From assembly GCF_026571515.1 (NCBI RefSeq), contig NW_026853829.1:248001-312000 (forward strand): a stretch of 64,000 nt of DNA, written 5' to 3'. Both the position numbers and the translations under genes were made by a program. The notes beneath the pieces were generated by a model that saw nothing but the letters and a program-made list of their open reading frames with translations, was not told the DNA's origin and made no database searches. Each line of letters opens with the position of its first letter. Within the stretch, counting starts at the first letter, position 1. The stretch comes from Ruditapes philippinarum (lineage: Eukaryota). Shown here in pieces: positions 2,227 to 64,000 of this stretch.

Positions 2227-4447
2227 AACAAGATATGTTTGTAAAACATGTATGCCCCCTATCAGCAGCCAATTAGTCATGTGATAAGGTTATTATGCAT
2301 GACTTCTGACCCAGTGATCAAACAATTAATAAGGTTTATAAAGTATCTACTGGTCATGACCTTGACCTTTGACCTCTTGACCCAAAACTCAATAGGGGTC
2401 ATCTGCTGGTCACGACCAATCATCATACAAAGTTTGAAGTTCCTAGGCCTAGGCATTTTTAGTAAATTGATCAGAAACCGTTTTTACCTACAAGGTCAAT
2501 GTGACCTTGACCTTTGACCCCTTGACCCCAAAATCAATAGGGGTCATCTGCTGGTCATGACCAATCACCATGCCTAGGTTTGAAGTTCCTAGGCCTAAGG
2601 TTCTCTTATTATTGATCAGAAAACCGGTTTAACATACAAGGTCAATGTGACCTTGACCTTTGACCCCAAAATCAATAGGGGTCATCTGCTGGTCATGACC
2701 AATCACCATGCTAAGTTTGAAGTTCCTAGGCCGAAGCGTTCTTTAGTTATTGATCAGAAAACCGTTTTTACTTACAAGGTCATTGTGACCTGGACCTTTG
2801 ACCCCTTAATCCCAAAATCAATAGGAGTAATCTGTGGTCATGACAAATCACCATACCAAGTTTGAAGTTCCTAGGCCTAAGTGTTCTTGAGTTATTGATC
2901 AGAAAACCGTTTTTACTTAAAAGGTCAATGTGACCTTGACCTTTGACCCCTTCACCTAAAATTCAATAGGGGTCATCTGCTGGTCATGACCAATCATCAC
3001 ACAAAGGTTGAAGTTCCTAGGCCTAAGCGTTTTTAGTTAATTGATCGGAAACCGTTTTTTACCTACAAGGTCAATGTGACCTTGACCTTTGACCTCTTGA
3101 CCCCAAAATCAATAGGTCATCTGCTGGTCATGACCAATCACCATACCAAGTTTTGAAGTTCCTAGGCATAAGGGTTCTTAAGTTATTGATCGGAAAGCAT
3201 TTTTACCTACAAGGTCAATGTGACCTTGCCCTTTAACCCCTTAACCCCAAAATCAATAGGGGTCATCTGCTGGTCATGACCAATCACCATACCAAGTTTG
3301 AAGTTCCTAGGCCTAAGGGTTCTTTGGGTATTGATCGGAAACCTGTTTTTACCTAAGAGGTCAATGTGACCTTGACCTTTGACCCCTTGACCCCAAAATC
3401 AATAGGGGCATCTACTGATCATGTCCAATCACCATCTCAAGTTTGAAGTCCCTAGGGCCTAAGGTTCTTTCATTATTGATCGGAAAACCGTTTTTACCTA
3501 CAAGGTCAATGTGACCTTGACCTTTGACCCCTTAACCCAAAAATCAATAGGGGTCATCTGATTGGTCATAACCAATCACCATACCAAGTTTGAAGTTCCT
3601 AGGCCTTAAGGTTCTTTAGTTATTGATTGGAAACCGTTTTTACCTACAAGGTCAATGTGACCTTGACCTTTGACCCCTTGACCCAAAATCAATAGGGGTC
3701 ATCTACTGATCTTGACCAATCACCATACCAAGTTTGAAGTTCCTAGGCCTTAAGGTTCTTTAGTTATTGATCGGAAACCGTTTTTGCTTTCAAGGTCAAT
3801 GTGACCTTGACCTTTGACCCCTTGACCCCAAAATCAATAGGGGTCATCTACTGATCATGACCAATCACCATACCAAGTTTGAAGTTCCTAGGCCTTAAGG
3901 TTCTTTAGTTATTGATCGGAAACCGTTTTTGCTTACAAGGTCAATGTGACCTTGACCTTTTACCCCTTGACCCCAAAATCAATAGGGGTCATCTACTGAT
4001 CATGACCAATCTCCATACCAAGTTTGAAGTTCCTAGGCCTTAAGGTTCTTTAGTTATTGATTGGAAACCGTTTTTGCTTTCAAGGTCAATGTGACCTTGA
4101 CCTTTGACCCCTTGACCCAAAAATCAATAGGGGTCATGTACTGGTCATGACCAATCACCATACCAAGTTTGAAGTTCCAAGGCCTTAAGGTTCTTTAGTT
4201 ATTGATCGGAAACCGTTTTTGCTTTCAAGGTCAATGTGACCTTGACCTTTGACCCCTTGACCCCAAAATCAATAGGGGTCATCTACTGGTCATGACCAAT
4301 CACCATACCAAGTGTGAAGTTCCTAGGCCTAAGGGTTCTTTAGTTATCACTCGGAAACCATTTGGTCTACGGACCGACGGACCGACAGACCGACGGACCG
4401 ACAAGTGCAAAGCAATATACCCCCTTTTCTTCGAAATGGGGGCATAA
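2227..4447 (+). mobile_element. Non-autonomous Helentron-type (HINE/pearl-like) element with ~14 x 145-bp tandem core
   Basis: 5' AAACAAG...TATGCCCCC subterminal IR and 3' hairpin CCCCCTTTTCTTCGAAATGGGGGCATAA. GACC/GACG microsatellite at 4370-4402. Monomer anchor CAAGGTCAATGTGACCTTG recurs at 3791, 3936, 4081 and 4226. Confidence 0.85.
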
Positions 4448-9045: not shown

Positions 9046-10720
9046 AGATATATAGATTTTCAAATTAACAGATAATTAATTCTTAATTAATAAATAAGAA
9101 AAAAAAACCTTACATACTCATAGTCTTTATATAATTAAAATAACAATTTATATAATTATTATTGTATACTTATTTTTACTAAAAAGGGCTAAGACAGTTA
9201 TTGAATGTGCCATTATTTATAACAGGTCAATTTGAAAGTGAATATAACTGTGCTTATACATGTACAATATCTATGATAAGAAATGTTATGAAGGCTGATT
9301 TGTATTTTACATCAAGGACACCGGGCGAAAACATGAAAATGCAACAAACGAACCACTTTGTGGTAGATTTTATTTTCATGTTTTCATCTGGCGCCCGGTT
9401 ACTTTTTGTACTTTGTTGGTTTTATGTGGCACAAATCCACCACTATAAAATTTAGTGTACAAATTTATTCAAGGACTAGTAACAATTATCTACTATCTAA
9501 TGTAAAGTCTGTTGTCGGGTTGACTCAGGAGACCTGGAGGTTGAGACCGGTGTCCCTCCATTACAAATAGATAAGTCAGAAGCTGTCCTTTTCAAACTAT
9601 GCACATGTTAGAAAAAAATTAGAATAACTATTCAGAACATGATTTTTTGAGGCTTTATCAATTATATTGCTTGATCCGAGTTTCAGGACATTTTCAATCA
9701 ATACATGTATTATCATTTATAACTTTAAATGAAAGTCTCATCCCTTTAATAATAATGACATAACTGCAACTCTTTAAATTCAGAAATATTATAAGTCTCA
9801 TCATACCAATATACTAAGATATAAATGTATGCACATAACATTAATAATTCCAAGTTTCTATTAAATAAATATGAAATATATTGGGTATATAAAGCCAGTA
9901 AAAGTATATATATATATCAATATTCACTCATCAGGGCCTCTATGCTTTTGATGACCTTACAACTGGTAAATTTTATAAAACAAAAATTGTAAGTAATACC
10001 TAAGATAGACGGAAAAGAACAAATAATTTAGTAAACATGAGTTACTTCCCCTTGAAATAAAGAAAACATGAAACCCAAAAGAACACCCTAAACATCAAAA
10101 TTAAGAAATGTTGCAGGCTCATTTTAATTATGCCATGCAAATTAATGGTAAAGAATTCATAAAAAAGTAGATGGCCATGTGACAGCAGTAATTGCAGAAA
10201 ATCGGATAGCTGTCAACATCCGGATACTGGTACACTTTGTAAAAACAACCATTCTGATCAACAGATAAACGTAATATGGATAAAATCAATAGGATAATCG
10301 TTTACAACAGTCCATTACCTATCCTAATACTCATTTGCAGGTGAACTTTCTTCTTGTAGGAAAGTTTTAAAAATATATAAATGAATGAGCATCAATGTAG
10401 ACCACAACGATATTCGAAATCCGGGTTTTAGTATTGTCAATAAAACAAAGGGACAAGCTGTTAATCAGAGCCTGCAATTTCGTGAAAATTATATCACAAT
10501 GCACATGCTTTTTATATAAAGTTATTAAATACAAATATAACAACATATTTGTTTACTTGATTTTTACGAATCAAAATAAATATAATTAACACAACATGAA
10601 ATTAACTGCTAATAATAACAGCTCCTTCCATAGGCAAAAATAAAAAGCATTCCATATAAGACGACGCCGCTCACCGGCGTCGCCAATAAACTTCACGAAT
10701 CCCTCTTGTATATACATGTA

Positions 10721-12173: not shown

Positions 12174-13257
12174 TTAGCCAACAATGGTATTGACATCATC
12201 GTTCTGAAGAAGGAGAAATCCGCTAAACGTTGAATAAAAAAAGGTGCTACCATATATTGCGTCATCAACTTCATAATTCTGAATGGCAACATCATCTCCT
12301 TGTTGAAGTTGTGTAACAATCATTTGACTTCCTTGGTCATGTCTTCCGTCTGTACCGCGAGCGTACACGGATGTCTTGACTACATTATTAACGACCAGGT
12401 TGCACCAAACTTCTCTATTGTGATCAGCCAGCACGGACGTAAAGAACACATAGAGACCTGACACTGGGGCAGTAAAAACACCATGATGAGGATTGTAGCC
12501 ATTTCCGATATTAGTTTCTACGTGGTCGAATACTACGTTCTGGTGAGCACCAACATGTTGTGCTGTTTTTGAAAGACCAGCAGTAAATGCAACAGCCGCT
12601 TCATTTGCTATGCTGCGGATTCTATCTATTGAAAAAGAATATGATTAATGTCAACGTCCGCTTCATTAGTGACACATTTAAATAACTGGTGAATTTTATA
12701 ATATGAAATAAGTATAAAGACAGTGAAAAAGTAGGAATGTAATAATCAAGCGGTATCGAAAACATTATTAAAACTAAATAAATATATTAATACATGCCGA
12801 ATACAGTCATAGAAGATAAAAAGATATAAATGTATAAAGCCAAAATACCCGACATTTTTGACGATTTTTGAACCCCATTCTCTGCCGATACAGGTTTTCC
12901 ATCTCTATGTTTACGCCTGGAGTTCCAAGTGCACATCTTTATTCGCCTCGTCAGTTGAGAAATCAGGCGACCATTTTGAATACTTTTCTCGCGCCAAGCT
13001 TCATTTTCATCCTTTTGATTTAAAAGCTCTTCCTTCAGGTCTATCATTTCTTGTCTATGATCTCGTTTGAGTTCTTCTAGCAAACCGGCTTGTTTTTTGG
13101 TGTATTCCTCAAGATCAACTATACGTTTTAGGAGATCGTGGACATTGGGCTCATTTAATGTCGAGTCAAAGTCTGCATTAACGGACGAAGATATTGTATT
13201 TTCAGCTTCCAAAAATGCAAATAATGCAGCAAATAATAAGAACCGAAGGAGCGCCAT
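12174..13257 (-). CDS. C1q-domain-containing protein 2, exons 13257-12849 and 12625-12174, 286 aa
   Basis: Signal peptide MALLRFLLFAALFAFLEA, coiled coil, phase-1 GT-AG intron and complete gC1q domain; spliced length 861 nt. Confidence 0.92.
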
Positions 13258-18689: not shown

Positions 18690-20916
18690 AACAAGAGGGC
18701 CATGATGGCCCTAGATCGCTCACCTGACCCATCAAACTCATCCAAACAATTACCTAGACAAGCATTCTGACCAAGTCTCATGACAGGTGAGTCAAAAATG
18801 TGACCACTACAGTGTTAACAAGGATTAACCATATTTGAGCAGTGTGACCTAGTTTTTTACCCAGGTGACCCATATTCAAACTTGACCTAGAAATCATCAA
18901 AACGAACTTTCAGACCAATTTCCAGGATATTTGGATCAAAACAGTAGCAACTAGAGTGTTAACAAGATTTTTCTATTCTTTGCTCCGGTGACCTAGTTTC
19001 ACATGCGATTTCGAACTCATCCGAGCAATTACATAGACAAGCATCCTGACCAAGTTTGATGATAATTGAGTCGAAAATGTGACCACTAGAATTTTAACAA
19101 GGTTTTTCCATATTTGGGCGGTGTGCCCTAGTTTTCATCCAAGATGACCCATGTTCGAACTTGACTTAGAAATCATCAAAACCAACTTTCAGACCAATTT
19201 ACAGGATATTTGGATCAAAACAGTAGCCACTAGAGTGTTAACAATATTTTTCTATTTTTAGCTCCTGTGACCTAGTTTTTCATCCGAGATGACCAATGTT
19301 CGAACTCATTCAAGCTATCACCTAGACAAACATCCTGACCAAGTTTGATGATGATTGAGGCAAAAATGTGACCGCTGGAGTGTTAACAATGTTTTTCTAT
19401 TTTTAGCTCCGGTGACCTAGTTTTTCATCTGAAATGATCCATGTTCGAACTCATGCAAGCTATCACCTAGACAAGCATCCTGACCAAGTTTGATGATGAT
19501 TGAGGCAAAAATGTGACCGCTAGAGTGTTAACAAAGTTTTTCTATTTTTAGCTCCGGTGACCTACTTTTCATCCGAGATGACCCATGTTCGAACTCATCC
19601 GAGCTATCACCTAGACAAGCATCCTGACCAAGTTTGATGATAATTGAGGCAAAAATGTGACCACAAGAGTGTTAACAAGGTTTTTCTATTTTTAGCTCCG
19701 GTGACCTAGTTTTTCATCCAGGATTACGCATGTTCAAACTCATCCAAGCTATCACCTAGACAAGCATCTTGACCAAGTTTGATGATGATTGATGCAAAAA
19801 TGTGACCGCTAGAGTGTTAACAAGGTTTTTCTATTATTAGCTCCAGTGACCTACTTTTTCATCCGAGATGACCCATGTTCGAACTCATCCGAGCTATCAC
19901 CTAGACAAGCATCCTGACAAAGTTTGATGATGATTGATGCAAAAATGTGACCGCTAGAGTGTTAACAAGGTTTTTCTATTTTTAGCTCTTGTGACCTAGT
20001 TTTTCATCCGAGATGACCCATGTTCGAACTCATCCAAGCTATCACCTAGACAAACATCCTGACTAAGTTTGATGATGATTGAGGCAAAATTGTGACCTCT
20101 AGAGTGTTAACAAGGTTTTTCTATTTTTAGCTCTTGTGACCTACTTTTTCATCCGAGATGACCCATGTTCGAACTCATTCGAGCTATCAACTAGATAAGC
20201 ATCCTGACCAAGTTTGATGATGATTGAGGCAAAAATGTGACCGCTGGAATGTTAACAAGGTTTTTCTATTTTTAGCTCCAGTGACCTAGTTTTTCATCCG
20301 AGATGACCCATGTTCGAACTCATCCGAGCTATCACCTAGACAAGCTTCCTGACAAAGTTTGATGATGATTGATGCAATAATGTGACCGCTAGAGTGTTAA
20401 CAAGGTTTTTCTATTTTTAGCTCTTGTGACCTAGTTTTTCATCCGAGATGACCCATGTTCGAACTCATCCAAGCTATCACCTAGACAAACATCCTGACTA
20501 AGTTTGATGATGATTGAGGCAAAATTGTGACCTCTAGAGTGTTAACAAGGTTTTTCTATTTTTAGCTCTTGTGACCTACTTTTTCATCCGAGATGACCCA
20601 TGTTCGAACCCATCCGAGCTATCACCTAGACAAACATCCTGACCAAGTTTGATGATGATTGAGGCAAAAATGTGACCTCTAGAGTGTTAACAAGGGTTTT
20701 CTATTTTTAGCTCTTGTGACCTAGTTTTTCATCCGAGATGACCCATGTTCGAACTCATCCGAGCTATCAACTAGATAAGCATCCTGACCAAGTTTAATGA
20801 TGATTGAGGCAGAAATGCGACCGCTAGAGTGTTAACAACAAAATGTGAACGGACGACGGACGACGGACACTCATCGATCCTAAAAGCTCACCCTGAGCAT
20901 GCTCAGGTGAGCTAAA
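18690..20916 (+). mobile_element. HINE/pearl-like element with ~14 x 145-bp tandem core
   Basis: 5' AACAAGAGGGCCATGATGGCCCT hairpin + GCTCACCTGA. 3' GGACGAC microsatellite and hairpin AGCTCACCCTGAGCATGCTCAGGTGAGCT. GAACTCATCC anchors at 19591 and 19881 give 2 x 145 bp. Confidence 0.88.
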
Positions 20917-21568
20917 ACAAACAAATGTTGGAAAAAGCAGACTTAAATAAGAAACAGATAAACTTAGAAAACTCCTCTTACTTGGAAACGTACTTACTTA
21001 CTTTGGAAATCCAAATAAAAAATTGTCGTCGCATAATGAAACAGAAAGACTTATGCTTGCTTCGTGAATTGCAAAGATACTTAGTAAATACAGGTTAGGG
21101 TAAGAATTCAACAAAAGTTAAGGCAATGAACACAATTACTATTCAACACCCGTTTACTATATAATTATTTTATATATGTCGGATTGTCCCGTTGTCACAT
21201 TATTTTCCAGATGAAGCCCACCAAACTCGATTAAATGCACATTCTAGAGTCCTACACGACCTCAAGCCGACCCTACACAATTTTTTACAACTTGTACAAT
21301 CCGACCACATCCAGACTTGTCCTCTTCTATCAACCACGCCTATACACGATCTCAACTAGACTCACTGGTCCTCTGCCCGATCGTTTCCAAATTTCCACCC
21401 AACGAGATCGTAATGATCGTAATTGAGTCGTGAATGGTCGTATATCGTATAGTAATATATCTTCAAACATTACTGGTTCAAATTAGTTCATGATTGAGAA
21501 TGAGCAGTTGCAGTTTTGTTCTCGATGGTTAGAGCTTCAGAGGATCAGGGCTATGGCTGTACTACTAA

Positions 21569-22680
21569 AATAGAGAAAACCAGAATCCCTAAAGAATGTT
21601 CAACACAACTAAATTGAAAATGTTGCAGGCTCGGTTTGATTGAGCCTGTTCATGGACGGTACTGGAAAGTGCAAGTTACCGTCCACGCCCCCTACCACCG
21701 GATTAAGCAGAATTCAACATTTAACACGAAAATGGTGAAATTTTGAATTAAGAAACGTCCGCAGATGTTTTCATCTCTTACTTCATGATGTATTTTGCCT
21801 TTTTAGGCATTTTTGTTGCCAGAATTTGTTTGTTATATCTTCAAATTTGTAACAACTATAAAATAGATAAATACAGAATCCCTAAAGAAAGCCCAACACG
21901 GCAAAGTTGAAAATGTTGCAGGCTCGGTTTGATTGAGCCTGTTCATGGACGGTACTGGAAAGTGCAAACTACCGTCCACGCCCCCTAGCACCGGCTTAAG
22001 CAGAATTCAACATTTAAACATGTAATAGTAAAATTTAGAATTTAGAAACATCCGCAGATGTGTTCATACGGCGGTTATCATGGAACCTTCAATGTGACAC
22101 TTCCGTGCCATACCATGAAAAGCGGCGTATGGTCCCCAAGTAATAAAAAGCGTGTGCCCTAAACGAGTAAACAATGGGCGGAACTAAATAAAATGGAATT
22201 TTGAAAGGGGATCAGAGGTTATGAAGCCTGCGTATCACAGATAAAATAGATAAATACAGAATCCCTAAAGAAAGCCCAACACGGCAAAATTGAAAATGTT
22301 GCAGGCTCGGTTTGATTGAGCCTGTTCATGGGCGGTACTGGAAAGTGCAAGTTACCGTCCACGCCCCCTAGCACCGGCTTAAGCAGAATTCAACATTTAA
22401 CATGAACTGGTAAAATTGAGAATTTTGAAACATCCGCAGATGTGTTCATATGGCGGTTATCATGGAACCTTCAATGTGACACGTTAGTGCCATTCCATGA
22501 AAAGCGGCATATGGTCCCCAAGTAAAAAAATGCGTGTGCCCTAAACGAGAAAACAATGGGCGGAACTAAATAAAATGGAATTTTGAAAGGGGATCTGAGG
22601 TTATGAAGCCTGCGTATCACAGATACGACGTCAAAAGACAAATTTAAAAAGCAGGCAACATATCCTAAGGGTGATTCAAT
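21569..22680 (-). repeat. Family A structured repeat: three head-to-tail 5'-truncated copies (21569-21770, 21862-22243, 22245-22680)
   Basis: Each copy begins on + with AATAGA(T/G)AAA..CAGAATCCCTAAAGAA (the common 3' end of the minus-strand unit) and extends for a different length. Confidence 0.85.
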
Positions 22681-23361
22681 AAGACATCAACAATAATTTT
22701 ATTTTGATTTATTGTTTTGGTCTTGTAAACTCTTGTATGTGCGCATGATCAAATTCAATTAGACCAATCTTATTTTATTTTATGCTTTTGAGTGGATTAC
22801 TGATTTATCCGTAAAATAATATCTGATAATTTCACAGTGAAAATTATCATAATATAATCTCATACTTTTCAATGACGAGACTATTTTTAAAGATTTTCCC
22901 CATGTGGTACCTCATATTTATTTTTTGCTGACAATTCCGACATTGTCAGTGCTGTGTAGAGAAAAGCAAAGCTGAAATTGATACATAACTTAAATTTCAA
23001 AAGAAGTAAAAAACAAAACTTACTTCAATTCATTCAAATTTCCTATCACCAAATAATTATCATCTTTTTGTTTCATTTTTACGGTATGAAAATACACTTC
23101 CTTCTACATGCGCATTCTGGTGGCATTTCGCTGCATCATTTATGAACATCAATAAAAAGAACTAGAATTCTACAGCTTACCTAAGTCAAACGAATATCAA
23201 TATTATATCGATGTTTTTCTGTTTCACGGTAGTTTTTGACTTGTAGTAATTTTGGAGTCTGATACCTGCGTTGTACACGCGATCTGATTGGATGTCCAAT
23301 ACATACAGGATACTAGAATAAATTTAATACACCAGCTAAGCAGACGCATATGTATACACAA

Positions 23362-24328
23362 AATAGATAAATACAGAGTCCCTAAAGAAAGCTCAACACG
23401 GCAAAATTGAAAATGTTGCAGGCTCGGTTTGATTGAGCCTGTTCATGGACGGTACTGGAAAGTGCAAGTTACCGTCCACGCCCCCTAGCACCGGCTTAAG
23501 CAGAATTAAACATTTAAACGTGAAATAGTAAAATTTTGAATTTAGAAACATCCGCAGATGTGTTCATACGGCGGTTATCATGGAACCTTCAATGTGACAC
23601 GTCCGTGCCATTCCATGAAAAGCGGCGTATGGTCCCCAAGTAATAAAAAGCGTGTGCCCTAAACGAGAAAACAATGGGCGGAACTAAATAAAATGGAATT
23701 TTGAAAGGGGATCAGAGGTTACAAGGTTTGTTTGTGCCGTGTGGAGGCTGTAAAAAGTCGCCCCGTACATTCAATCAGAGATGTTATATTTCCGATCCTT
23801 AAAGATCGTTCAGCACGACATTATTGTTGTGCTTGTGGTATTTTTAGTTTTAACTTTTCGGCATTTTCTAGTTTGGTGGTTCCAATATTCTTACTTGAAT
23901 AATGTTCAATCACCCTTAGGATATGTTGCCTGCTTTTTAACTTTGTCTTTTGACATCTTATCTGATATGCAGGCTTCATAACCTTTCAAAATTCCATTTT
24001 ATTTAGTTCCGCCCATTGTTTTCTCGTTTAGGGCACACGCTTTCTATTACATGGGGACCATACGCCGCTTTTCATGGAATGGCACGGAAGTGTCACGTTG
24101 AAGGTTCCATGATAACCGCCGTATGAACACATCTGCGGATGTTTCTAAATTCAAAATTTTACCATCTCATGTTTAAATGTTGAATTCTGCTTAAGCCGGT
24201 GCTAGGGGGCGTGGACGGTAGTTTGCACTTTACAGTACCGTCCATGAACAGGCTCAATCAAACCGAGCCTGCAACATTTTCAATTATGTTGTGTTGGACT
24301 TTCTTTAGGGATTCTTATTTTCTCTATT
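23362..24328. repeat. Family A inverted pair: antisense copy 23362-23720 fused to longest sense copy 23721-24328
   Basis: The outer ends are reverse complements (AATAGATAAA... / ...TTTCTCTATT) and 23980-24328 mirrors 23362-23720. Confidence 0.88.
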
Positions 24329-24474
24329 CTACAGTGGCTTCAACAAAAAAATGCGCTTTTCTTCTGCAAATGTGAATAAAATATAGCACTAATTTTTCTC
24401 TCCAACAAAAGGGGTCCTTCGTGTACTCTACTTTCAGTCGACAAAATGTCATACATTTTCTAAAATCCTGTTAA

Positions 24475-24955
24475 AATATGATAAACAAGATCAACAAGGA
24501 AAGGCGGCGTTCAATGAACGCAACCCCCACATGACCCAGCAACATTGGAAATTATTTTCTATAATGATGAGCCACAACTTTAAGAAAAATTGGGTCATGT
24601 TTACACCGCTAATCAAGTAAAGGAAAAATTATCTGATTGTATACTAGACATATGATTGTTGTGCAAGTCAAAACTCTCAAAAGCTTAACTAGGAATAAAA
24701 CTTTAAGTGTATCAGTCCATCTGCGCGTGTTTCTAAATATTTCATGTAAAATGTTGAATTTTGCTTAAGCTAGTGATAGGGGGCGTCGACTTTAGCTTAC
24801 ACTGCGTTCATTGAATGCCGCCTTTCCTTGTCGATCTTGTTTATCATATTTTACACTTCCGAGTACCGTTTATGAACAGGCTCAATCAAACCAAACCTGC
24901 GACATTTTAAATTTTGCCGTTTTGGGCGTTCTTTAGGGATTCTTTATTGCTCGAT
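24475..24955. repeat. Family C copies (24475-24543 minus; 24804-24850 plus) and a decayed family A copy (24715-24955) interrupted by family C
   Basis: Motif GTTGCGTTCATTGAACGCCGCCTTTCCTTGTTGATCTTGTTTATCATATT; TTACACT is duplicated at 24797-24803 and 24851-24857. Confidence 0.8.
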
Positions 24956-32202: not shown

Positions 32203-33175
32203 TCCCTATATGTCGCCACTACTCCGTAGAGGCGACACAAAAATGAAATAAACAGAGGTCATTCATTTCTCCACAATTGTATAACTAAAATGCTATGGCT
32301 CTTCAGAATGTCGCCCGGGATCTAACCGGTAGGGAAGTTTGGTTTGCTGGGTCGTGTGGGAGTTGCGTTCATTGAACGCCGTCGTTCCTTGTTGATCTTG
32401 TTTATCATATTGTATTGCTTGCAATACTTTGTTATATGGGCATATATTTAAATAAAACAAAAAATACCTGTTTGCTTACCAAAATTTATTTTATGTCTAT
32501 TTGAATAACATTTAATGCTAAATAACATGAAATATTGAATATTGTATTTGATATACTAATATCTAGATATCAAAACTTCCACTATATATTACTAAAATTT
32601 GAAGCAAATAAGGTAAGAAATCAAGTTACAGAAGCTCGCAAAATCTCTGTATTAAATTGTAAAAAGTAATACTTAGCAAATCTATATTTGCACGCAAATA
32701 TAACAGAAATTTGTTGGATAACAGTGTTTTTAACGATCAAAACAATGGATTAGAGACTGTTAGGTACTTTCTGCCTTTTTAAAGTAGGCTGATTGTGAAA
32801 TAACTACCCATACATGTGGAATATAAAAAATAGCAGTTTGAATTCCATACAAAATACTATATCTGTACTAATACATATGTTATTTAGCCAATAAAACTAT
32901 AAAGAACACCAAAACTAACAAGCTTTTGAGAAATAAACATAAAAAGTATTTCTGGGACATAACGCCATCTTAGTACAGTAACGGTCTTACTAAAAAAGAT
33001 AATAGAGTTAACCCGCTACTGTTCCGAGGTGATGATTTGGTCTTTAAACATTTTAATCGATTAAATGAATACGCTTGTTTTATATTTATTCAAACAGCTA
33101 CACCCCGTGTAAGATGACAAATATTACATTTTTGTTTTATTTTTAATTCCCATTTAAATCTACATCATATTTTAT

Positions 33176-34469
33176 TTAGACAGTAATGACACTAGTGCCT
33201 AGTCCTTGCTGAAGAAGAAATCCGCTGAAAGTTGAATAAATATAAGGATCACCAAATAACTCGCTTTTGACTATAAGATTTTGGACAGCCACAACATCCC
33301 CTTGTTGAATCTGAATGACTAATGTTTGACTTCCTTGATCATACCTACCATCCGTACTACGTGCATAAGCAGATGCCTTGATCAGTCCATTTACTACCAA
33401 TTCACCAAACACTTCCTGATTTCGATCAACAAAGATTGAAGTGTGAAAAACATAGAGACCTGATACCGGTGCAGTAAAAACGCCTTCATGAGGATTATAG
33501 CCATTTCCAATATTTGTTTCTACGTGGTCAAATGGTATGTTCTGGTGAGCTCCTAAATTGTCCACACTCTTACTAAGACCAGCGGTAAACGCAACAGTTA
33601 ATTCATTATCCTTCGTCTGCTGAATTCTGTTGACTGAAAACATAAATAAATGTAGATTTCTTATCATATTGAAACAAAAACCGTATTTCTTAAGTTGAGT
33701 TCGCAGTCTTTCGGTCAATTGGAGATTAAACATTTACATTTTCAAAATTGCCGATTTGTGCGTTCTATAGGGTTGTGCTAGCGGGAGTGGAGGGTAACTT
33801 GCACATTCCTGTACAGTCTATGTCTAGGCTCAATGAAACCGAGCCTGCAACATTATCAATTTTGCCATTTTGGACTTTCTTTAGGAAGTCCTTTCCTCTC
33901 TATTTTTTAATTCTGCTCATAATGATAAAAATGTTGATCATAATTAACTGAACCAGCAGGTATAATACTATGTTTATTATTTAGATAACATTTGTATAAT
34001 TAGGATAACAAAAGTCAAAGTCTATTCATACACCCAAAAGCATGACAAAAGGTGTCATGTCTCTTCAAATAATTAAATCGAATATCATACCTGGTGTTTC
34101 TTCAGTCATCTGTTTTGTTTTATCAAGGACACTTTTCTGTGACATTTCCATATGTTTTACACGTCGAATCAGTTGTAGGATAAAACGATCTTGATGATTT
34201 CTTTTCTTGCGCAAGGCAGCTATCTCATCCTTTTGATTCAGCAGTTGTTCATTGAGGAGACCTATTTGTTTTTTGTGATATCGCTGAAATTCGTTAAGCA
34301 TTTGCATTTGTTGTTTACTGAAATCCTCAAGGTCATCAACGCGTTTAAGAAGTTCCCGAACGTTAAAATCATCCGGAGTTAGTTTTGTGTTGACCGATGA
34401 AAGGTTAATAAAGTCTGCCACCAATGAAGCAAAATTCAAGATTAAACAAAAGTACTGTAAAGGAGACAT
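33176..34469 (-). CDS. C1q-domain-containing protein 3, exons 34469-34091 and 33633-33176, 278 aa
   Basis: N-terminal hydrophobic segment, coiled coil homologous to the paralogs (LLKRVDDLE...QKDE...RFILQLIRR), phase-1 GT-AG intron and full gC1q; spliced length 837 nt. Confidence 0.92.
33768..33904 (+). repeat. Decayed family A 3' fragment inside the C1qDC-3 intron
   Basis: GTGCTAGCGGGAGTGG...AGGCTCAATGAAACCGAGCCTGCAAC...CTCTCTATT. Confidence 0.75.
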
Positions 34470-37428: not shown

Positions 37429-39523
37429 ATACGAGAACTCTCAACTGAACTCAGCGGCCCTCTTTACTCTCTTTTCAACTACTCTCTCCAAATGTGTCAA
37501 GTTCCTGATGCTTGGAAAGAAGCAAACGTCTCTCCACTTTTCAAATCCGGTGATCCATCTCTAGTAAATAACTACCGTCCCTCTTATTAGCACTATCAAT
37601 AAAGTTTTTGAAAGAATCATATTTAAACATACATACAATTTCCTTCATTCTAATAATATTCTTACCCCATTACAATCAGGTTTTGTTCCTGGTGACTCTA
37701 CAATAAATCAATTGACTTACATATACAATTTATTTGCTCAAGCCATTGATTTTGGAAACGAGGTAAGAACAGTTTTCTGTGACATCAGGAAAGCGTTTGA
37801 TCGTGTATGGCATAAGGGCCTTATCTATAAACTTAATAACATTGGAATTTCCGGTCGTCTTTTACTCTGGTTTACTTCCTATCTTGATAACATAAAACAA
37901 AGAGTTGTTCTTAAAGGTTGTACATCTTCTGATAATTATATAAAGGCTGGTGTCCCTCAAGGATCTATACTTGGGCCACTTCTTTTTCTAATATATATAA
38001 ATGACATTGTTCTTGATATCAAAGCAAACATCAGACTTTTCGCTGATGATACTAGTCTATTCATTATTGTTGAAGATCCGCTATCAGCTTCCAATATTCT
38101 AAATACAGACTTGCAAACAATAGACAGATGGTCAAAAAAATGGTTAGTCAAATTTAATCCTTCAAAATCTGAATCAATGTTAATATCCCGTAAAACAAGA
38201 CAAGTAATTCATCCGTCCATTATTATGCAGGGTCAACCAATAAATAAAATAAATAATCATAAACACCTAGGTATAATTCTTTCAAATGATCTTCGCTTGT
38301 CGGCACATCTTGATTACACTAAAACTAAAGCCCGGAAAAGAATAAATATAATGAAAAAACTTAAATTTACACTTGACCGGAAGTCTCTTGAGACCATTTA
38401 CCTTTCATTTATTAGACCTATCCTTGAATACGCTGATGTCTTATTTGATAACTGTACCAAATTAGAAAAAAACGGAACTAGAACAAATTCAACATGAAGC
38501 TGCAAGGATAGTGACAGGAACAACCAAACTCGTCTCTATTGACTACTTATGTCTGAAATTGGCTGGGAAACTTTAGAAAAAAAAGAGATACAATCATAAA
38601 CTTATCTTATTTTACAAAATGAAAAATAATCTCATTCCAGACTATCTCTCTGATCTTGTCCTTTCTTCTGTTGGCTCCGAACATCGATATCCCTTAAGGA
38701 ATGCCCAAGATATACAGACCATCCGATCACGCACAGATTTTTACTATAAATCCTTTCTACCATCTGTAATAAGAGACTACGCTTGCCGCTTTTAAGCGCA
38801 GTCTTAAAAGTGAAGTATCAAATATACCGAACTTCTTTTACTATGGTGAGCGAAGAGACCAAATAATGCATACCAGACTTAGAACCAATTGTAGCTCTCT
38901 TGCATCTGATTTATTTGATAAGAATATTGCCGAGTCTCCATTGTGTGATTGTGGGGTGGTTGAAAATTCCTATCATTTTTTCTTTATTTGTCCAAAATAT
39001 GTACATCTACGTCCCAATCTACTAAACGCTCTTTCCAACTTTTGCACTCCAACTTTGCATGTTATTCTTTATGGAGACCCTGCTTTACCTGCGGACTCCA
39101 ACACTGCTATCTTCGCCGCTGTTCATAAATTTATAAGAGATACTAAAAGATTCTAACATGTAATATACTAGTTGTCATATAACATAGTGTTCACACAAGT
39201 TGTTTTCCATACATGATGTTCGTACCAAAACGACAAATGATTTAGAAACATCCGCAAACTCCTCTTTTCTCCATCTTTCTCTTTATTATTTTCTATCAAT
39301 TGCATACATGTATTTGTATTTTTTTTATTTTTTCTTCATTTTCTTTCTTTATAGGGTTTAATTAAAATTATAATAAGCCATGTATTATATGAACATATTG
39401 CTTTTGTTAAAGGAGAGGACTACCATGAGCTATTGTAGCTCTCGGTCCAATTCCTTTCTGCTTAAATTGTAAATTATTAACATGTATATATTACCTTGAA
39501 TAAAAATATGTTTAAACCAAAAA
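37429..39523 (+). mobile_element. 5'-truncated CR1-group LINE (RT, C-terminal CCHC region, 3' UTR)
   Basis: ORF 37712-38497 has DIRKAFDRVWH, GVPQGSILGPLLFLIYIND and LFADD. ORF 38866-39156 has CDCG..ENSYHFFFICP. Several frameshifts. The 3' end is a stem-loop followed by AATAAAAATATGTTTAAACCAAAAA. Confidence 0.92.
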
Positions 39524-40547
39524 TTATATTTTCAACAAACAAGAACATTTAGAAAATGATGTTTGTTTCAGACATACGCACAAATTTAATGGACTATTAT
39601 TGCGTTTTGCAGAAAGTTGTAAAATGTTGTTCTGTTTTACGTAAAAATCTAGAGATTTAAAATATTTTGCACAAAAACTTTGTTGTATAGGTGTAAAAAA
39701 ATATATGTTAATTCTGACTAATTTTAACACTGGTCACATGAAAATATGCCATTACCGTGTTATAAGTGATAACGCGGAATTAGTGATGTTCAGTATATAA
39801 TAAATTCTATTTTGTTAATTAATTGTAATTTTTAACCACTCATTGTGTCTTTTATGCAAGAGTATCCCCAAATATTTTCGAATTAAACAAATCTTTCATA
39901 GCAGCAAAAAGACCTCTCGCATGCTTCTTTTTTATAGAAGCAAACTTGTTTTATAACTTACAAGTTCATTAAATTTTGTATGCTCAAATCGAAATCCCTT
40001 ATGTTTAAAGACTAGACTTTTCTCTGTTTTGAATTGCCACAGATTGAATTACAGAACATTGAATTATATCTGGACGAAAAACATAGCAAGCATAAGTTAT
40101 AACTTTGGTATATTTTAATTGAAACAATGAAGACAATGCATGTACTAGGTGACAAAATAATTTAATGTGTATAAAGACATTTACGAACCTTGCTGGTGGT
40201 CATGTTTAAGGGGATGCGTTCATTTAATTCCGCCCTTCCTTGTTGATTTTGTTTTTAATATTTCAAAGATGCAGTAAATATGATAATTTATATCACAGGC
40301 CGTTGATAACGAGCGATACAGGAGCAAGCCAAAAAACATAAATGATTCATCAGGTCCCACGGTTATAAACATTTAAAAAATCTAAACTCAGTACTTAGTT
40401 CCATGCCCCGAGTCCGACCTCAGTGGAGATTTAGCTCAAAGTGAGATTATAAAACGCCTGAGACCGATCTCAGTTGAGCACAAAATGAGTAGAGTTTGTT
40501 ATTTATATAAGTGGCCCGCAGTACCGGAAGTCTACAGTTTGTCTGAT

Positions 40548-54406: not shown

Positions 54407-54830
54407 ATTGATGCAAGCACTATTAAGTGTGGGTATGGAGTACCGCTCAAGCCGGTGCTAGAGGGCGTGAGGGATGTTGCACATTTTTATTTTCCCTCAT
54501 CAAACCGAATCTGCAACTCATTTGTAATTGTGTTGTAATTAATGCTTTCGAGGGATCACTTTGTTTTCAGATTTTTATACTTCACAACAGCAGGTGTCAA
54601 GTGATGTGTGGCAGCTGTCAAACGTTGCCCGTACTTCACTTCAGTGTTGTTATATTTTTCTGGTCCTTCGGGATCATTGATGCCAGCGAGAATTGAGAAC
54701 CCGGTGCTAGGGTGCGTGAAGGATGTTGCACATTTTCATTATCCCTAATGTACAGACTCAAGCAAACCCGATTCTGCAATTCTCTTGTAATTTTGGTGTG
54801 ATAACTGTTTCCGAGGGATAACTTTTATAT
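54407..54830 (+). repeat. Family B structured repeat (about 1.5-2 tandem units; left piece at 48626-48651)
   Basis: Reverse complement of the 60245-60692 array; split by the ISL2EU insertion. Confidence 0.85.
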
Positions 54831-58680: not shown

Positions 58681-60244
58681 TGAACACGAATACAAAAATA
58701 AAAATGTGCATAAAATATTGATAAATTTATTGATACTTATAAAAAAAAGAGAGCAGATAGCCAAACTTTCCAAGCAGACATAGGTTTGATTTGCCATTGT
58801 GACCACAATGTTTTATAACCTTTACAATTGCTAAAATAGCTACTGTTTCATTACAATTGTTTTGACTAAAATAACTAATTTTTAATACTCCTTAAACCCC
58901 GGTCAAAAGCTGCACAAATGCCTAGAATTGTCAGCAGCTTATTTGAATACACTATGAATATTAAACGTTACCCTCAGGATTCCAAATGCCAAGTGACATT
59001 CAAGATACCATATTGATTTAACTTTGGCATTTGTCTGAGGAAATCACATTTAAGCAATTTGAAATTTTACCAAAAGTCTAGACTAGCGTTAATGAATTAG
59101 CTTCTTTGATGTTGCAAAAAGTGATATGTAGTGGAATACACTTGACTAACAATTTGAGCAAATAACCATCTTATCAGGAGAAATTCTGACTTGATAGAAA
59201 GTGTTCATTAACATGGAGCGTCTGACAGAAAAAAAATCAATATATGATAAACAAGATCAACAAGGAAAGGCGGCGTTCAATGATTAACAATAATTAATTT
59301 AATTATTTAAACTAATAATACAACAAAACGAATTGGGTTTTTATCAATCAGATATTTTGACTTTAATACTGCAACAGAAACTATTCAAGTAAAAATAATA
59401 ATATCAAACAACATAAATATAGAAAACGGTTTTTTAAACTAACCAAGTTGCAGAAGCACTAAATAAATCTCAATGTTTAGAAAGTAAACATCAATTCACT
59501 TTGCCATTCTCGTCAATGCTGGTTATGTTTAACAAATAGTAAAGACCAAAGCTTTCAAATTATTTAAATATTATCTATTGAGTTAAACAACGAATAAAAG
59601 CCGAGAATTTACTTGTAGATAAGCAAAACACTTAATGTTTAGGAATAATATTAGCCCTTTATATAAAGCACTAAATATGGTTTTTTATTATCGCCCAAAA
59701 TATAAAAGTGTTCAAGTAAAATAAATTTCCTGCATTATGTAAGTTTGTTAATAACATTTCTATTAAGAGTTGTAACTTCTTCAGTAAACAATTTCTTAAT
59801 TTTCATGGATTTGGCATTTAATAAACAAACAAACAAGTTATTTAATTTTAGTCTTTGTCTCAGGAAACCAAAGGTTCTCTCTAGCAAATTATAGATTAAT
59901 CAGGTAATATTTTTTTCTTCCTATCCTGTCGCACATAGTTAAGTAAACATTTGATAGAAAATTAAAAAGCAGAAAGAAAATTAAAAAGCAGAATAATATC
60001 AACATTTCACAGAAGAGTAAGCGAAGTTAGATTTCCAGTTCCCGATTCATTAACATTACCCTTGTAAACGGTGTACTGCTTGATTAGAAATTTTTACCAA
60101 GTATCAAATATGACAATTACAGGGACGTCTGAATCTTCTGTAAAACAAACAACATAACCATAAAGAACAGTAATATAATTTTTTATGTTCATGAAAAAAA
60201 AATGACATACATTTTTTTATTCATTTTATCGCATGAACTACACA

Positions 60245-60692
60245 AATAAAAAAATCTGGAAACAAAGTGATCCCTCGGAAGCATTAATCACAACAAAATT
60301 ACATAAGAATTGCAGACTCGGTTTGATTGAGTCTGTACATGAGGGATAATGAATGAGTGCAACATCCTTAACGCCCCCTAGCACCGGCTTGAGCGGTACT
60401 CAATTCTCAACACTTAATAGCGCTGGCATCAATGATCCCGAAGGACCAGAAAAATATAACAACACTGAAGTGAAGTACGGGGCAACTTTTTACAGCTGCC
60501 ATACAGCACTTGACACCTGCTGTTGTGAAGTATAAAAATCTGGAAACAAAGTGATCCCTCGGAAGCATTAATCACAACAAAATTACATAAGAATTGCAGA
60601 CTCGGTTTGATTGAGTCTGTCCATGAGGGATAATGAAGGAGTGCAGCAGCCCTCACGCCCCCTAGCACCGGCTTGAGCGGTACTCAATTCTC
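60245..60692 (-). repeat. Family B tandem array, 284-bp period, ~1.6 units
   Basis: AGAATTGCAGACTCGG at 60306 and 60590; the units are nearly identical. Confidence 0.9.
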
Positions 60693-61685
60693 AAACCATC
60701 CATAGTTCTGTATTAGAGTAAATTCCAATGTAATTAATATCGGATATGGTATATCTGAGATGATATAAATTTGAAAATTTAACAACTATTTCAGGAAAGA
60801 CATTATTTATGTTGTAGACATAAAGTAGGAAATGTTTCGTGGTGTACATGATAACAGACTTATACAAAATAAATGAGTAAATCAAGTAGTTTAGGTAAAC
60901 TTTAACTGAAAAGAATTATTTAAATTTCAATATGAGTTATAACAAAACAAATTCATCTTACTATCATTACCATTTACAGAAGCATTTACAACGTAAAAAC
61001 AAATTTACTGCTATGGAAATGACCACTAAAACGAAGGTACATTTGACATTGTTGATATCCTTTATCTTTCTAACTTGTTGCGTTCATTGAACGCCGCCTT
61101 TCCTTGTTGATCTTGTTTATCATATTTTGTGTAAATCATTACAAAAAAATGATTTTTATCAAAGTTATCTAATTAACAATATTCAATTTTTTTAAGGTAT
61201 AGGAGTAACAGTTTTTTCGCGGGTATGTTTGAAAGACAAATCATCACCCTAAACGTCATACGGTGACTTTCAAGCTCTACTGGTCGAGGTCATTTGAGAA
61301 TAATATTCCTTACAGTCTGAAAGTTGGTACCAAAAGGCTAATGTAATATTTCATAATAATGATGTCAATAGTTTTGCATTTTCAATTCCACGCTTGATAT
61401 TGTATCACGAGTTGTTATGTTATTAATTCTAAAATATATAGAACTGCCAAGTCATTTTTACAAAGAATATTTTATATATTGACAATCATATATAACATAG
61501 CTATCAAAATAAATGTGATAATATCGGCATTTCACCATTTAAGTTTAATTTAACAATTTGGAAAACACCGAATTTGCCATAACAATGCCGATAATTTCTT
61601 AATAAATAGAACAGGATTATGTTTTAAACTGAAGAAAAAAATTAAGTTTTGAAAGTGAAACATTTACATACAAATACTGTAAACA

Positions 61686-62866
61686 AATAGAGAAAAACAA
61701 AAGCCCTAAAGAAAGCACAACACGGCAAAATGTAAAATGTTGCAGGCTCGGTTTGATAGAGCCTGTTCATGGACGGTACTGGCAAGTGCAAGCTAGCGTC
61801 CACGCCCCCTAGCAAGCAGAATTCAACATTTAAACACAGAAATGGTGAAATTTTGAATTTAGAAACATCCGCAGATGTTTCTAACTAAATAAAATGGAAT
61901 TTTGAAAGAGGACCTGAGGTTATGAAGCCTGCATATCACAGATAAGTCGTCAAAAGACAAATTTAAAAAGCAGGCAACATTTCCTAATGGTGATAATACA
62001 GTATTCAAGTAGGAATATTGGAACCAAACAATTACTAGAAATATAAAGTATTCACAATTCTGTGTTTTGAGAGTAAAATATAAAGGAACGCTTATAATAT
62101 AGATAAATACAGAATCCCTAAAGAAAGCCCAACACGGCAAAATTGAAAATGTTGAAGGCTCGGTTTGATTGAGCCTGTTCATGGACGGTACTGGACAAGA
62201 ATAAAGATAAGGTCAAAAATTAAACTAACGATTCATCCAGTATGCAATCGACGATCTGTCTAGCCGATAGCGCGACACAATCTTACAATCCCTAACGTCC
62301 TCTAGCCGTACCCTTTTTAAAAACGCTATTTCTTTTTTTCAATGATCTCTGATCTCAGAAACGTAAATTTATTCCATTTTGGAGTACATGTGACGTCACG
62401 CAAACGTCGTTCGACAGCACATTCGTAACTGCCGCGGCTATTATCTACAATAACCTCGGAAACAATACGGATCGCAAGTAGTTATACCACGTGGTTTCAG
62501 ATGTTAACAAAAACTGAGTTTGCAATGTAAAACGAATGTATATATTTGACATCAAAAGGTAAAATAAGGTAGGTTTCGGGCTTGTACCGCTCAAGCCGGT
62601 GCTTGGGGACGTGAGGGATGTTGCACGTATTCATTATCCCTCATGTACAGACTCAATCAAATAGAGAGAAATAAGAATGCCTAAAGAAAGCCCAACACGG
62701 CAAAATTGAAAATGATGCAGGCTCGGTTTGATTGAGCCTGTTCATGGACGGTACTGTAAAGTGCAAGTTACCGTCCACGCACCCTAGCACCGGCTTAAGC
62801 AGAATTCAACATTTAACACGAAACTTTTGAATTTAGAATCACCCACAGATGTGTTCATACGGCGGT
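61686..62866. repeat. Cluster of family A copies (61686-62042, 62097-62195, 62660-62866; minus) and a family B fragment (62583-62660; plus)
   Basis: Same AATAGA.AAA...CCTAAAGAAAGC start and GCAGGCTCGGTTTGATTGAGCCTG core as the 21.5-24.3 kb cluster. Confidence 0.85.
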
Positions 62867-64000
62867 TGTGTATACATGTAGTGACGTCGGACATGTCCGC
62901 AATTTTTAAATCCCCTTCTGACTCAATGCAAATACAAGCGCTAGTAAAACAAGTATATTTATTCTAAATAATGTATTTCAATCATCTAAACAGAATGGAT
63001 AGATAGAAGGATGTTTGTTTTATTACGTAAGTAGTGATTTTTTATGTATACTTACCGCATCGATTAAATATCGATAAACAAACACAGGCATTTCCGGGTT
63101 TTATCATGGGCGCGACCATCTTGAAAATCATGTGATAGGTGCTTTCTTTAAATGGGTATAACGTGACACTAATTTGGCCAATCGTGGAACTTTAGTACCG
63201 TGTGCAAAGGAGAAAACTCCGAAGAAACATCTGAGTGAGTAAAAGTTTGTTCACAAGGAAAGGAGGCGATTCGTCTTTGAAAATTGTAAAAATTACATCT
63301 CCACAATATAGCATAAATATTACGCAAGCTGCGAAAGAGAGCCAAAAGTTTGTTTTTCCAGGAAAGGAGAGCGATTTCGTCTTTTGAAAATTAGTAAAAA
63401 ATTACAATGTCCACAATATAGCATAATATATTTACGAAAGCTTGCGAAAGTCAGAGCAGTCTAAACAGTCCCTAAACTACATGTAAATGGTTTTAAACTG
63501 CCCTTAAAACGAAGGGCACGCCCGGGCAAGCTTTTGAAAGTGGGTCATGTCAAACCGGAAGCCATCCATTGATTGTCCCGTAATGTATTTTCGCGATGTT
63601 ATAAAAATGCCAGGAATCGTTATTGGTATCTCTATTTGGCAATAGATATCACTGTATGTGTGTTGTTTTCTTATTTTTAGTATTTGATAGTTCATGTAGA
63701 TCTATGATTACTGTAGATGTCCATCTTTTTTAGGCGTCTTAAGACTAAGTCTTAGACTTTTATTGAATGTTGTTGCAGTTAAGTCATACGGCATGCAATG
63801 AGTGACATTCCGAGCCAAGATCAGTTGAACACCCAACAAGATTTGTTTGATAGTGAGCAGGATTTGTTTGACAGCCAGCAACCTGAACAGGACTTGTTTG
63901 ACAGCCAACAGCTTGAAGAGTCGTTTGACAGCCAACACTCTCTGTTTGACACTGACAGCTCGCCGAACAGAACATTTACTGATCCGGTAATTATAAATTA

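What the first reader, a model, noticed from the sequence alone, without database searches (positions are those of the whole stretch)
24175..24279. Covarying multi-helix RNA-like domain shared by two otherwise different repeat families: candidate new ribozyme or mobile-RNA motif
Seen: family A (sense copy here) and family B (minus strand 60691-60590) keep the same fold with swapped pairs. The closing helix is AAAUGUUG/CAACAUUU vs AGAAUUG/CAAUUCU. The middle helix is UGGACGGUA/UACCGUCCA vs UGAGGG(AU)/(AU)CCCUCA around a loop retaining UGCAC. The last helix is CAGGCUC/GAGCCUG vs CAGACUC/GAGUCUG around an invariant AAUCAAACC loop. The segment GCUYAAGCCGGUGCUAGGGGGCG is nearly invariant, and B adds AGUACCG/CGGUGCU with a G-U pair. 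Known: metazoan retrozymes and many Penelope-like elements are tandem, truncated units carrying self-cleaving ribozymes. Inference: variable stems with fixed loops and junctions indicate a functional RNA. I find no hammerhead CUGANGA/GAAA, twister, HDV or pistol core, so this may be an undescribed catalytic or RT-recognition motif.
Basis: partly seen in the sequence, partly recalled or inferred. Interest (0 to 1): 0.9.

Follow-up and report, generated by a model that had tools for sequence, protein, structure and literature searches.

The report
Conserved four-way-junction RNA in retroposon tails
The flagged 105 bases are a real, evolutionarily maintained four-helix RNA fold near the 3' end of a very abundant non-coding "jumping" element, found in this bivalve-like genome and at least two other species; it most likely helps the element get copied and shows no sign of being a new ribozyme.

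Summary
The genome has about 12,400 exact matches to its two invariant anchors, against 0 for a reversed control. All carry one of two stem versions (A, B). Metagenome contigs from other organisms supplied two more lineages (M1, M2) that are absent from this genome. Across the four lineages, 91-92% of pair cells are paired (34-52% when partners are slid), 15 of 24 pairs change on both sides, and one pair shows all four Watson-Crick types. No Rfam family matches.

A and B are not "otherwise different": they also share a head module and the terminal tail. They are non-autonomous retroposons with a fixed 3' end, scattered 5' truncations, variable target-site duplications and [truncated][full] partial tandems. 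The junction sits about 55 nt from the 3' end. Copied templates run intact through it, with no truncation hot spot and no RNA-end pile-up, so self-cleavage is unsupported. It is most likely a cis-acting platform for binding the reverse transcriptase or its RNA-protein complex. The partner RT was not found. Identity with a named SINE domain could not be tested. Other first-reader notes from this scan cover the same repeats in this window.

The parts
24175..24279 (+). Flagged copy of the domain (family A): four-way junction. H1 24175-24182/24272-24279; H2' 24187-24191/24204-24208; H3 24210-24220/24236-24246; H4 24249-24255/24265-24271 with loop AAUCAAACC 24256-24264.
   Evidence: covariance-model hit of 135 bits
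23905..24331 (+). The 5'-truncated family-A retroposon copy that contains the flagged domain. The terminal tail is 24280-24331, with a sharp 3' end at ...TCTCTATT.
21566..23708 (-). Four more family-A copies arranged head to tail or truncated. Domains at 21605-21730, 21898-22023, 22281-22406 and 23398-23523.
60244..60696 (-). Family B: one full 284-bp unit (60244-60527) preceded by a 5'-truncated unit. Domains at 60292-60416 and 60576-60700. Head module around 60452-60509.
54423..54825 (+). Two decayed family-B copies, with domains at 54423-54525 (internal deletion) and 54680-54797.
61686..62867 (.). Cluster of truncated or decayed copies: A at 61722-61839(-), 62134-62229(-) and 62697-62822(-); B fragment at 62574-62683(+).
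24741..24920 (+). Family-A domain interrupted in the H3 loop by about 50 nt of another short repeat (24803-24853).
33745..33868 (+). Old, decayed A-like copy (variant C), 49.9 bits to the model.
10056..10129 (-). Terminal tail only (homologous from the H4 loop onward, 77% identity), on a different, very young and abundant non-autonomous family with no significant fold.

Best explanation
The segment is the conserved structured 3' module of a superfamily of non-autonomous retroposons. Each element has three modules: a ~60-nt head with its own hairpins, this ~105-nt four-way junction, and an unstructured ~55-nt terminal tail. The family-A unit is 629 bp and the family-B unit is 284 bp.

Shown:
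- The elements spread by target-primed reverse transcription of a linear RNA with a fixed 3' end.
- Frequent template jumps leave [5'-truncated copy][1 nt][full copy] partial tandems.
- The junction is maintained by selection on RNA base pairing in at least three species.

Inferred: the junction acts in cis as a protein-binding platform that recruits the partner reverse transcriptase, or assembles the RNA-protein complex, just upstream of the tail where cDNA synthesis starts. This would be analogous to the structured 3' UTRs of 'stringent' LINEs and R2. The invariant single-stranded segments (GCUAGGGGGCG, AAUCAAACC, AUGNACAG) would be the contacts, and the stems the scaffold.
For: Element biology:
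- Sharp 3' boundary with decaying 5' conservation.
- Of 116 A copies, 87% end at the canonical 3' end, 28% are full length and the rest have scattered 5' ends.
- Variable target-site duplications, e.g. 15 bp in L021.
- [truncated][1 nt][full] tandems.
- No long ORF in the units.

RNA-level selection:
- 91-92% of cells paired versus 34-52% slid; 15 of 24 pairs changed on both sides; pair 97-113 is CG, GC, UA and AU.
- A blind RNAalifold run gives the same fold.
- About 10% of cells are G-U pairs, which would be A-C mismatches on the other strand, so the element's sense strand is the structured one.

Cross-species conservation: the M1 and M2 stem versions are absent from this genome, yet those lineages keep the same head, junction and tail order and sharp 3' ends.

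Modularity: A and B share only head, junction and tail. The short B unit is little more than these three modules, while A carries about 350 nt of extra unshared sequence. That is the pattern expected of cis-required parts.

The tail has no conserved structure, so the junction is the only fold near the priming site.

Precedent: compensatory changes in SINE/LINE 3'-tail stem-loops are described for bivalves (PMC4824008).
Against: - No partner RT with this 3' end was found. None turned up in 30 PLE loci, nor upstream of any copy in 483 kb of held sequence.
- A very successful young family (10.1k) carries only the terminal ~74 nt and no fold. The junction is therefore not strictly needed for mobilisation if that family uses the same RT.
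- The binding role is an inference; no protein contact was tested.
- There are only about four independent lineages.
- B alone is not thermodynamically exceptional in a wider context (z = -0.43).
Confidence: 0.55

Rival explanations
1. It is an undescribed self-cleaving (or ligating) ribozyme that processes multimeric transcripts of the tandem units, as hammerheads do in retrozymes and Penelope-like elements.
For: - Multi-helix junction with invariant unpaired nucleotides and covarying stems.
- Units occur head to tail.
- No known family matches, so it would be new.
- The hairpin loop CUYAAGC followed by AGGGGGCG loosely recalls twister motifs (from memory only).
Against: - Copies have one fixed 3' end about 55 nt downstream of the junction and run intact through it. 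The 23 truncation points that fall at unit positions 475-572 are scattered, with no hot spot.
- The partial tandems are [truncated][full] with a 1-nt spacer, which fits template jumping and not permuted circle-derived units.
- The RNA-seq runs X23 and X24 show no pile-up of molecule ends in the domain.
- Rfam twister, hammerhead, HDV, pistol, hatchet and hairpin models are silent at E <= 10, even on dimers.
Confidence: 0.07
2. The junction mimics or binds a host factor instead of the RT. Like the Alu domain binding SRP9/14, a cloverleaf-like fold could give RNA stability, export or ribosome docking, and so raise the element's chance of meeting a LINE protein.
For: - The topology is cloverleaf-like: an 8-bp closing stem and three arms with short junctions.
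- The tail alone suffices for another family, so the junction may serve a step other than priming.
- The invariant loops suggest a conserved, slowly evolving (host) ligand across species.
Against: - ARAGORN finds no tRNA-like gene.
- Rfam tRNA, 5S, 7SL and snRNA models do not match.
- No host factor is identified.
- Invariance of the two anchors across species is partly an ascertainment effect of the search pattern.
Confidence: 0.2
3. It is an already named SINE highly conserved domain (for example Meta, MESC, Snail, Nin-DC or Ceph), or a catalogued Repbase/Dfam mollusc element, so it is not new.
For: - Bivalve SINE superfamilies with deeply conserved central domains, shared LINE-type tails and tandem-like or palindromic arrangements are well documented (PMC4824008, PMC4758252, PMC11481361).
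- 'LP-SINEs' without a tRNA head and with a conserved ~70-bp 5' module are described in molluscs.
Against: - Full-text searches for the invariant strings on both strands found only unrelated primers.
- No supplements of the three key papers are held.
- Our elements have no tRNA head.
- Nothing positive links the sequence to any named domain.
Confidence: 0.25
4. The conserved strings act at the DNA level, for example as an internal Pol III promoter with A/B-like boxes, and the helices are incidental.
For: Two invariant blocks lie about 45 nt apart. The units end in T-runs in A and B.
Against: - Compensatory double changes and G-U pairs show selection on RNA pairing.
- The blocks lie near the 3' end, not the 5' end.
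- They match the A/B-box consensus poorly (own reading of the sequence).
- M1 and M2 end in only TTT.
Confidence: 0.04

Closest known systems
3'-tail stem-loops of 'stringent' LINE/SINE pairs (e.g. UnaL2/UnaSINE1; CR1/L2-type tails shared by bivalve V- and CORE-SINEs, PMC4824008) and the structured R2 3' UTR
   Same: A conserved RNA structure close to the 3' end of a TPRT retroelement, kept by compensatory changes, shared between otherwise different non-autonomous families and followed by a short terminal tail.
   Different: Here it is a ~105-nt four-way junction with long invariant single-stranded segments, not a single hairpin. There is no terminal microsatellite or poly(A). No LINE carrying it has been found. 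A tail-only family shows that the junction is dispensable for at least some mobilisation.
SINE highly conserved domains (V/Vhc stem-loop, CORE, Deu, Meta, MESC, Snail, Nin-DC) and mollusc LP-SINEs (PMC4758252, PMC4824008, PMC11481361)
   Same: A body module conserved across species and shared between element families with different remaining sequence. Bivalve-like host. Tandem-like and inverted arrangements. In LP-SINEs, a non-tRNA conserved ~70-bp head.
   Different: Sequence identity with any named domain could not be tested. These domains are usually defined by sequence conservation, whereas this one shows strong multi-helix covariation. Our elements have no tRNA head.
Hammerhead retrozymes and Penelope-like element pLTRs (PMC7229834; bioRxiv 10.64898/2026.07.22.740005)
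   Same: Short non-autonomous units in head-to-tail or partial-tandem and inverted arrangements, in a genome rich in PLEs (139 GIY-YIG matches).
   Different: No hammerhead or other known ribozyme. A fixed 3' end and 5' truncations instead of circularly permuted copies. None of the 30 sampled PLE loci shares the tail.
Twister / twister-sister ribozymes (Rfam)
   Same: A multi-stem junction with a G-rich strand and an AAGC-containing hairpin loop (a resemblance recalled from memory).
   Different: No Rfam hit at E <= 10 on monomers or dimers. The pseudoknot the resemblance would require is sterically implausible here, with a 1-nt linker across a 7-bp stem.

Membership tests
Any Rfam family (incl. 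hammerhead, twister, twister-sister, HDV-like, pistol, hatchet, hairpin, tRNA, 5S, 7SL) | Covariance-model score at or near the family's gathering threshold | tested here: not met
   0 hits at gathering score in the whole window. Only noise at E <= 10 on the A domain, the B dimer and the A dimer.
Self-cleaving ribozyme (functional class) | Site-specific cleavage leaving discrete RNA ends, or element copies that begin or end at the cleavage site | tested here: not met
   No truncation hot spot among 116 copies. No begin/end pile-up in the domain in RNA runs X23 and X24. In vitro activity is not testable here.
Non-autonomous TPRT retroposon (SINE-like) | Fixed 3' end, 5' truncation, variable target-site duplications, no coding capacity, high copy number | tested here: met
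Canonical SINE | 5' head derived from tRNA, 5S or 7SL RNA with Pol III A/B boxes | tested here: not met
   ARAGORN finds none and Rfam finds none. The head is a different conserved hairpin module.
LINE-derived 3' tail (SINE-LINE partnership) | The same 3' sequence at the end of an RT-encoding element in the same genome | tested here: inconclusive
   Not found in 30 PLE loci or upstream of any copy in 483 kb.
Named SINE HCD superfamilies (Meta, MESC, Snail, Nin-DC, V, CORE, Deu, Ceph) | Sequence identity of the central domain to the published consensus | not testable with these tools
   The consensus sequences are in figures or supplements that are not held. String searches of the paper library were blank.
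Metazoan retrozyme / PLE derivative | Type I hammerhead in each unit; pLTR homology to a PLE | tested here: not met
   No hammerhead. No shared tail with the sampled PLEs.

The most novel reading that the evidence does not exclude
The junction is a new catalytic or priming RNA. It could be an undescribed self-cleaving or ligating ribozyme class, or a cloverleaf-like 3' 'genomic tag' that a reverse transcriptase uses to position initiation, in an animal retroposon with more than 12,000 copies.
Probability: 0.08. Interest if true: 0.85.

Novelty: new variant of a known kind. Interest (0 to 1): 0.5.

Why it matters
What the deeply conserved body domains of SINE-like elements do is a long-standing open question, because they are usually defined by sequence conservation alone. 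Here a domain shows clear multi-helix covariation across species, with invariant loops. That points to an RNA-level, probably protein-binding, role and gives concrete compensatory-mutation experiments. It is also a well-supported candidate for a new RNA family entry, and a marker for an abundant, recently active retroposon superfamily with no tRNA head in bivalve-like genomes.

Tried and rejected
- Rfam at gathering score and at E <= 10, on monomers and dimers of both strands: nothing relevant.
- Twister-like reading of CUYAAGC + AGGGGGCG: rejected. There is no model hit and the pseudoknot geometry is implausible.
- tRNA-like gene: ARAGORN negative.
- More in-genome lineages: pattern searches returned only A, B and uncompensated mutants. 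The side lineages L051/L052 break H4 without compensation.
Replaced by CYGCU/AGGGG.
- PLE partner: the A copy next to a GIY-YIG ORF in L126 is an ordinary truncated insertion.
- ORFs upstream of copies: these were an LTR gag, a Harbinger DDE transposase and unknowns, not an RT.
- Tail-only copies in metagenome contigs: no ORFs upstream.
- Hammerhead-like string in L126, intended as a positive control: Rfam does not call it, so it is not used as evidence.
- Runs X21 and X22: discarded as RNA evidence because they behave like GATC proximity-ligation DNA.
- Conserved hairpin in the terminal tail: none predicted.
- HDV-like P1 pairing at unit starts: none seen by inspection.
- Literature string searches and supplements: blank or not held.
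- Domain scan of ORFs on M1 and M2 contigs to name the host: uninformative.

Full report
OBSERVATION. The segment at window 24175-24279 reads exactly as described, and so does the family-B copy on the minus strand around 60691-60590. The invariant core AAGCCGGTGCTAGGGGGCG occurs 12 times in the window (up to 3 mismatches) against 0 expected. The loop string CTCAATCAAACCGAG occurs 13 times against 0.08 expected. In the whole 1.4-Gb assembly, the anchored pattern GGTGCTAGGGGGCG-N25-55-AATCAAACC matches 6184 + 6227 times, and its reversed control matches 0 times. At least 40 copies are 100% identical to the flagged 105 nt. In a wider context A gives z = -2.39 and B only -0.43, so thermodynamics alone would be weak evidence.

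COVARIATION. Inside this genome only two stem versions exist. A has GGACGGTA/TACCGTCC and CAGGCTC/GAGCCTG. B has GAGGGAT/ATCCCTC and CAGACTC/GAGTCTG. Point mutants are not compensated, and small side lineages such as L051/L052 break the last hairpin. The decisive material came from one scan of metagenome contigs with the two anchors. Of 36 stretches, 9 were GC-rich chance hits, which the covariance model later rejected. The rest are AT-rich, ORF-poor, eukaryote-like contigs carrying true homologues in two further lineages. M1 has TCAGTGGT/ACCACTGA, a variant TCAGCGGT/ACCGCTGA, and CAGCTTC/GAGGCTG. M2 has TTGACAGT/ACTGTCAA and CAGTCTG/CAGACTG, with a sub-lineage CAGTCTC/GAGACTG. The M1 and M2 stem versions are absent from the window's genome: the single hit is a mutated A copy. 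They therefore come from other organisms.

Fifteen of 24 pairs change on both sides. The covariation score is 0.492, against at most 0.166 slid. Pair 97-113 shows CG, GC, UA and AU. RNAalifold, run blind on this alignment and on a second one that includes the tail, returns the same helices. It extends the middle helix by two pairs and adds a short helix of invariant bases, CYGCU/AGGGG. About a tenth of pair cells are G-U, which would be A-C on the opposite strand, so the element's sense strand is the structured one.

Two caveats apply. There are only about four independent lineages. Invariance of the two anchors in M1 and M2 follows from how those copies were found.

WHAT IT SITS IN. Anchoring 30 genomic copies on the core shows a sharp boundary about 140 nt downstream (...AGGGATTCTRTATTTATCTATTT, no poly(A), no microsatellite) and gradually fading conservation upstream. 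The full family-A unit is 629 bp. Many loci have the form [5'-truncated copy ending at position 629][1 nt][full copy 1-629], sometimes with further units. Flanks show variable target-site duplications, for example TGAAACTTTGCACAC in L021. Of 116 A copies, 87% end at the canonical 3' end, 28% start at the full-length 5' end, and the other starts are scattered. This is the signature of target-primed reverse transcription of a linear RNA with template jumping. The units have no coding capacity.

Families A and B are not otherwise unrelated. Besides the domain they share a ~60-nt head (GGCRGCTGTAAAAAGT...CCCCGTAC...) and the terminal tail. B (284 bp) is little more than head + junction + tail, while A carries about 350 nt of extra sequence. 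M1 and M2 have the same order of modules and their own sharp 3' ends, and where units are tandem the next unit's head follows directly. The head hairpin also shows compensated changes: GGCAGC/GUUGCC, GGCGGC/GUCGCC and GGCGAC/GUCGUC. The C1q-domain genes in the window fit a bivalve-like host; this is an inference, and the organism is coded in the tools.

KNOWN FAMILIES. Rfam gives nothing at gathering score in the window, and only noise at E <= 10 on the domain and on dimers of A and B, on both strands. ARAGORN finds no tRNA-like gene. Full-text searches for the invariant strings returned nothing or unrelated primers. The papers that define mollusc SINE domains (MetaSINEs, PMC4824008; MESC, Snail, Vhc and LP-SINEs, PMC4758252; bivalve HCD-SINEs, PMC11481361) show their sequences in figures or in supplements that are not held. 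Identity with a named domain is therefore untested. Those papers do document the general phenomena seen here: conserved body domains, tails shared between families with compensatory changes in stem-loops, heads that are not tRNA-derived, and tandem-like and palindromic arrangements.

RIBOZYME TEST. Three lines of evidence argue against efficient self-cleavage in the domain.

First, the copied templates run intact through it to a fixed end about 55 nt downstream. The 23 truncation points at unit positions 475-572 are all scattered.

Second, the tandems are [truncated][full] with a fixed junction, not circularly permuted units.

Third, reads were laid on a locus holding B and A tandems. Two runs labelled RNA (X21, X22) behave like GATC proximity-ligation DNA and were set aside. 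The two genuine RNA-seq runs (X23, X24; unstranded) cover the elements at about 10-290x, more over the junction and tail than over the 5' parts. Their loose ends run into specific host transcripts, and no pile-up of molecule ends lies in the domain.

This does not exclude catalysis, because standard RNA-seq is a blunt tool for mapping ends, but there is no positive evidence for it.

PARTNER. The partial-tandem and inverted arrangements suggested Penelope-like elements, and the genome has at least 139 GIY-YIG matches. None of the 30 loci fetched shares the tail. The one A copy downstream of a PLE ORF (L126) is an ordinary truncated insertion. No RT ORF lies upstream of any domain or tail copy in the 483 kb held.

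One relevant fact did emerge. A different, very young and abundant non-autonomous family (window 10.1k, minus strand; at least 1272 candidates at 98-100% identity) shares only the terminal ~74 nt, starting inside the H4 loop, and has no significant fold. The tail alone can therefore be mobilised. The tail itself has no conserved structure.

MECHANISM.
- Shown: a retroposon superfamily that uses TPRT, and a four-way-junction RNA near its 3' end maintained by compensatory evolution in at least three species.
- Inferred (confidence about 0.55): the junction is a cis-acting protein-binding platform that recruits the partner RT, or assembles the RNA-protein complex, next to the tail where priming occurs. 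The invariant single strands would be the contacts.
- Rivals: binding or mimicry of a host factor (about 0.2); a new ribozyme (about 0.07); a DNA-level promoter (about 0.04).
- Independently of mechanism, there is roughly a one-in-four chance that the domain already has a name in TE libraries.

VERDICT. The "new ribozyme" reading is unsupported, and the "mobile-RNA / RT-recognition motif" reading is the best fit. I rate it a new variant of a known kind, with interest 0.5.

Noticed in passing
L038:380-2330 (runs X21, X22): Two public runs labelled 'TRANSCRIPTOMIC RNA-Seq cDNA' give about 8000x depth equally on both strands, with chimeric joints and loose ends exactly at GATC sites. They look like proximity-ligation (Hi-C-type) DNA, not RNA.
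   Followed up: partly
window 60452-60509 (-), 23734-23791 (+); L082, L085, L092, L086: Head module shared by A, B, M1 and M2. It has a hairpin GGCRRC-loop-GUYGYC with compensated changes between lineages, and a UUCG-type hairpin (GGUCCUUCGGGAUC). It may be a 5' processing or promoter element. No HDV-like P1 pairing was seen by eye.
   Followed up: partly
window 10040-10420 (-): A separate, very young and abundant non-autonomous element (at least 1272 candidates, 98-100% identical over 381 nt). It shares only the terminal ~74 nt of the A tail, starting inside the H4 loop, and looks like a template-switch chimera.
   Followed up: partly
window 24471-24542, 32344-32414, 40190-40266, 45872-45925, 59239-59283, 61077-61128; insertion at 24803-24853: A short repeat (...AACAAGATCAACAAGGAAAGGCGGCGTTCAATGAACGC...) recurs at these places. 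One copy interrupts the H3 loop of the A domain at 24.8k. It may be the terminus of another mobile element.
   Followed up: no
L126, about 764-804 (-): A CUGAUGA-stem-GAAA hammerhead-like string lies about 700 nt downstream of a PLE GIY-YIG ORF. Rfam does not call it at gathering score or at E <= 10, so it is unconfirmed.
   Followed up: yes
L126:2735-2857 (+): A single divergent copy of the domain with a further compensated middle helix (UCAGAG/CUCUGA) and loop AAUCCAACC. It may represent a fifth lineage within this genome.
   Followed up: partly
window 12174-12464 (-), 33176-33733 (-): C1q-domain coding exons (Pfam E = 1.6e-14 and 5.6e-24), consistent with a bivalve-like genome.
   Followed up: no
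window 37712-38497 (+); 50644-51429 (-); 51502-52356 (+): An RT (RVT_1) fragment, and a YqaJ-like exonuclease ORF lying back to back with a DDE_Tnp_4/HTH_Tnp_4 (Harbinger-type) transposase ORF.
   Followed up: no
window 2357-4363 and 18735-20838: Two different satellite arrays with a 145-bp period (about 13 copies each, 89% matches).
   Followed up: no
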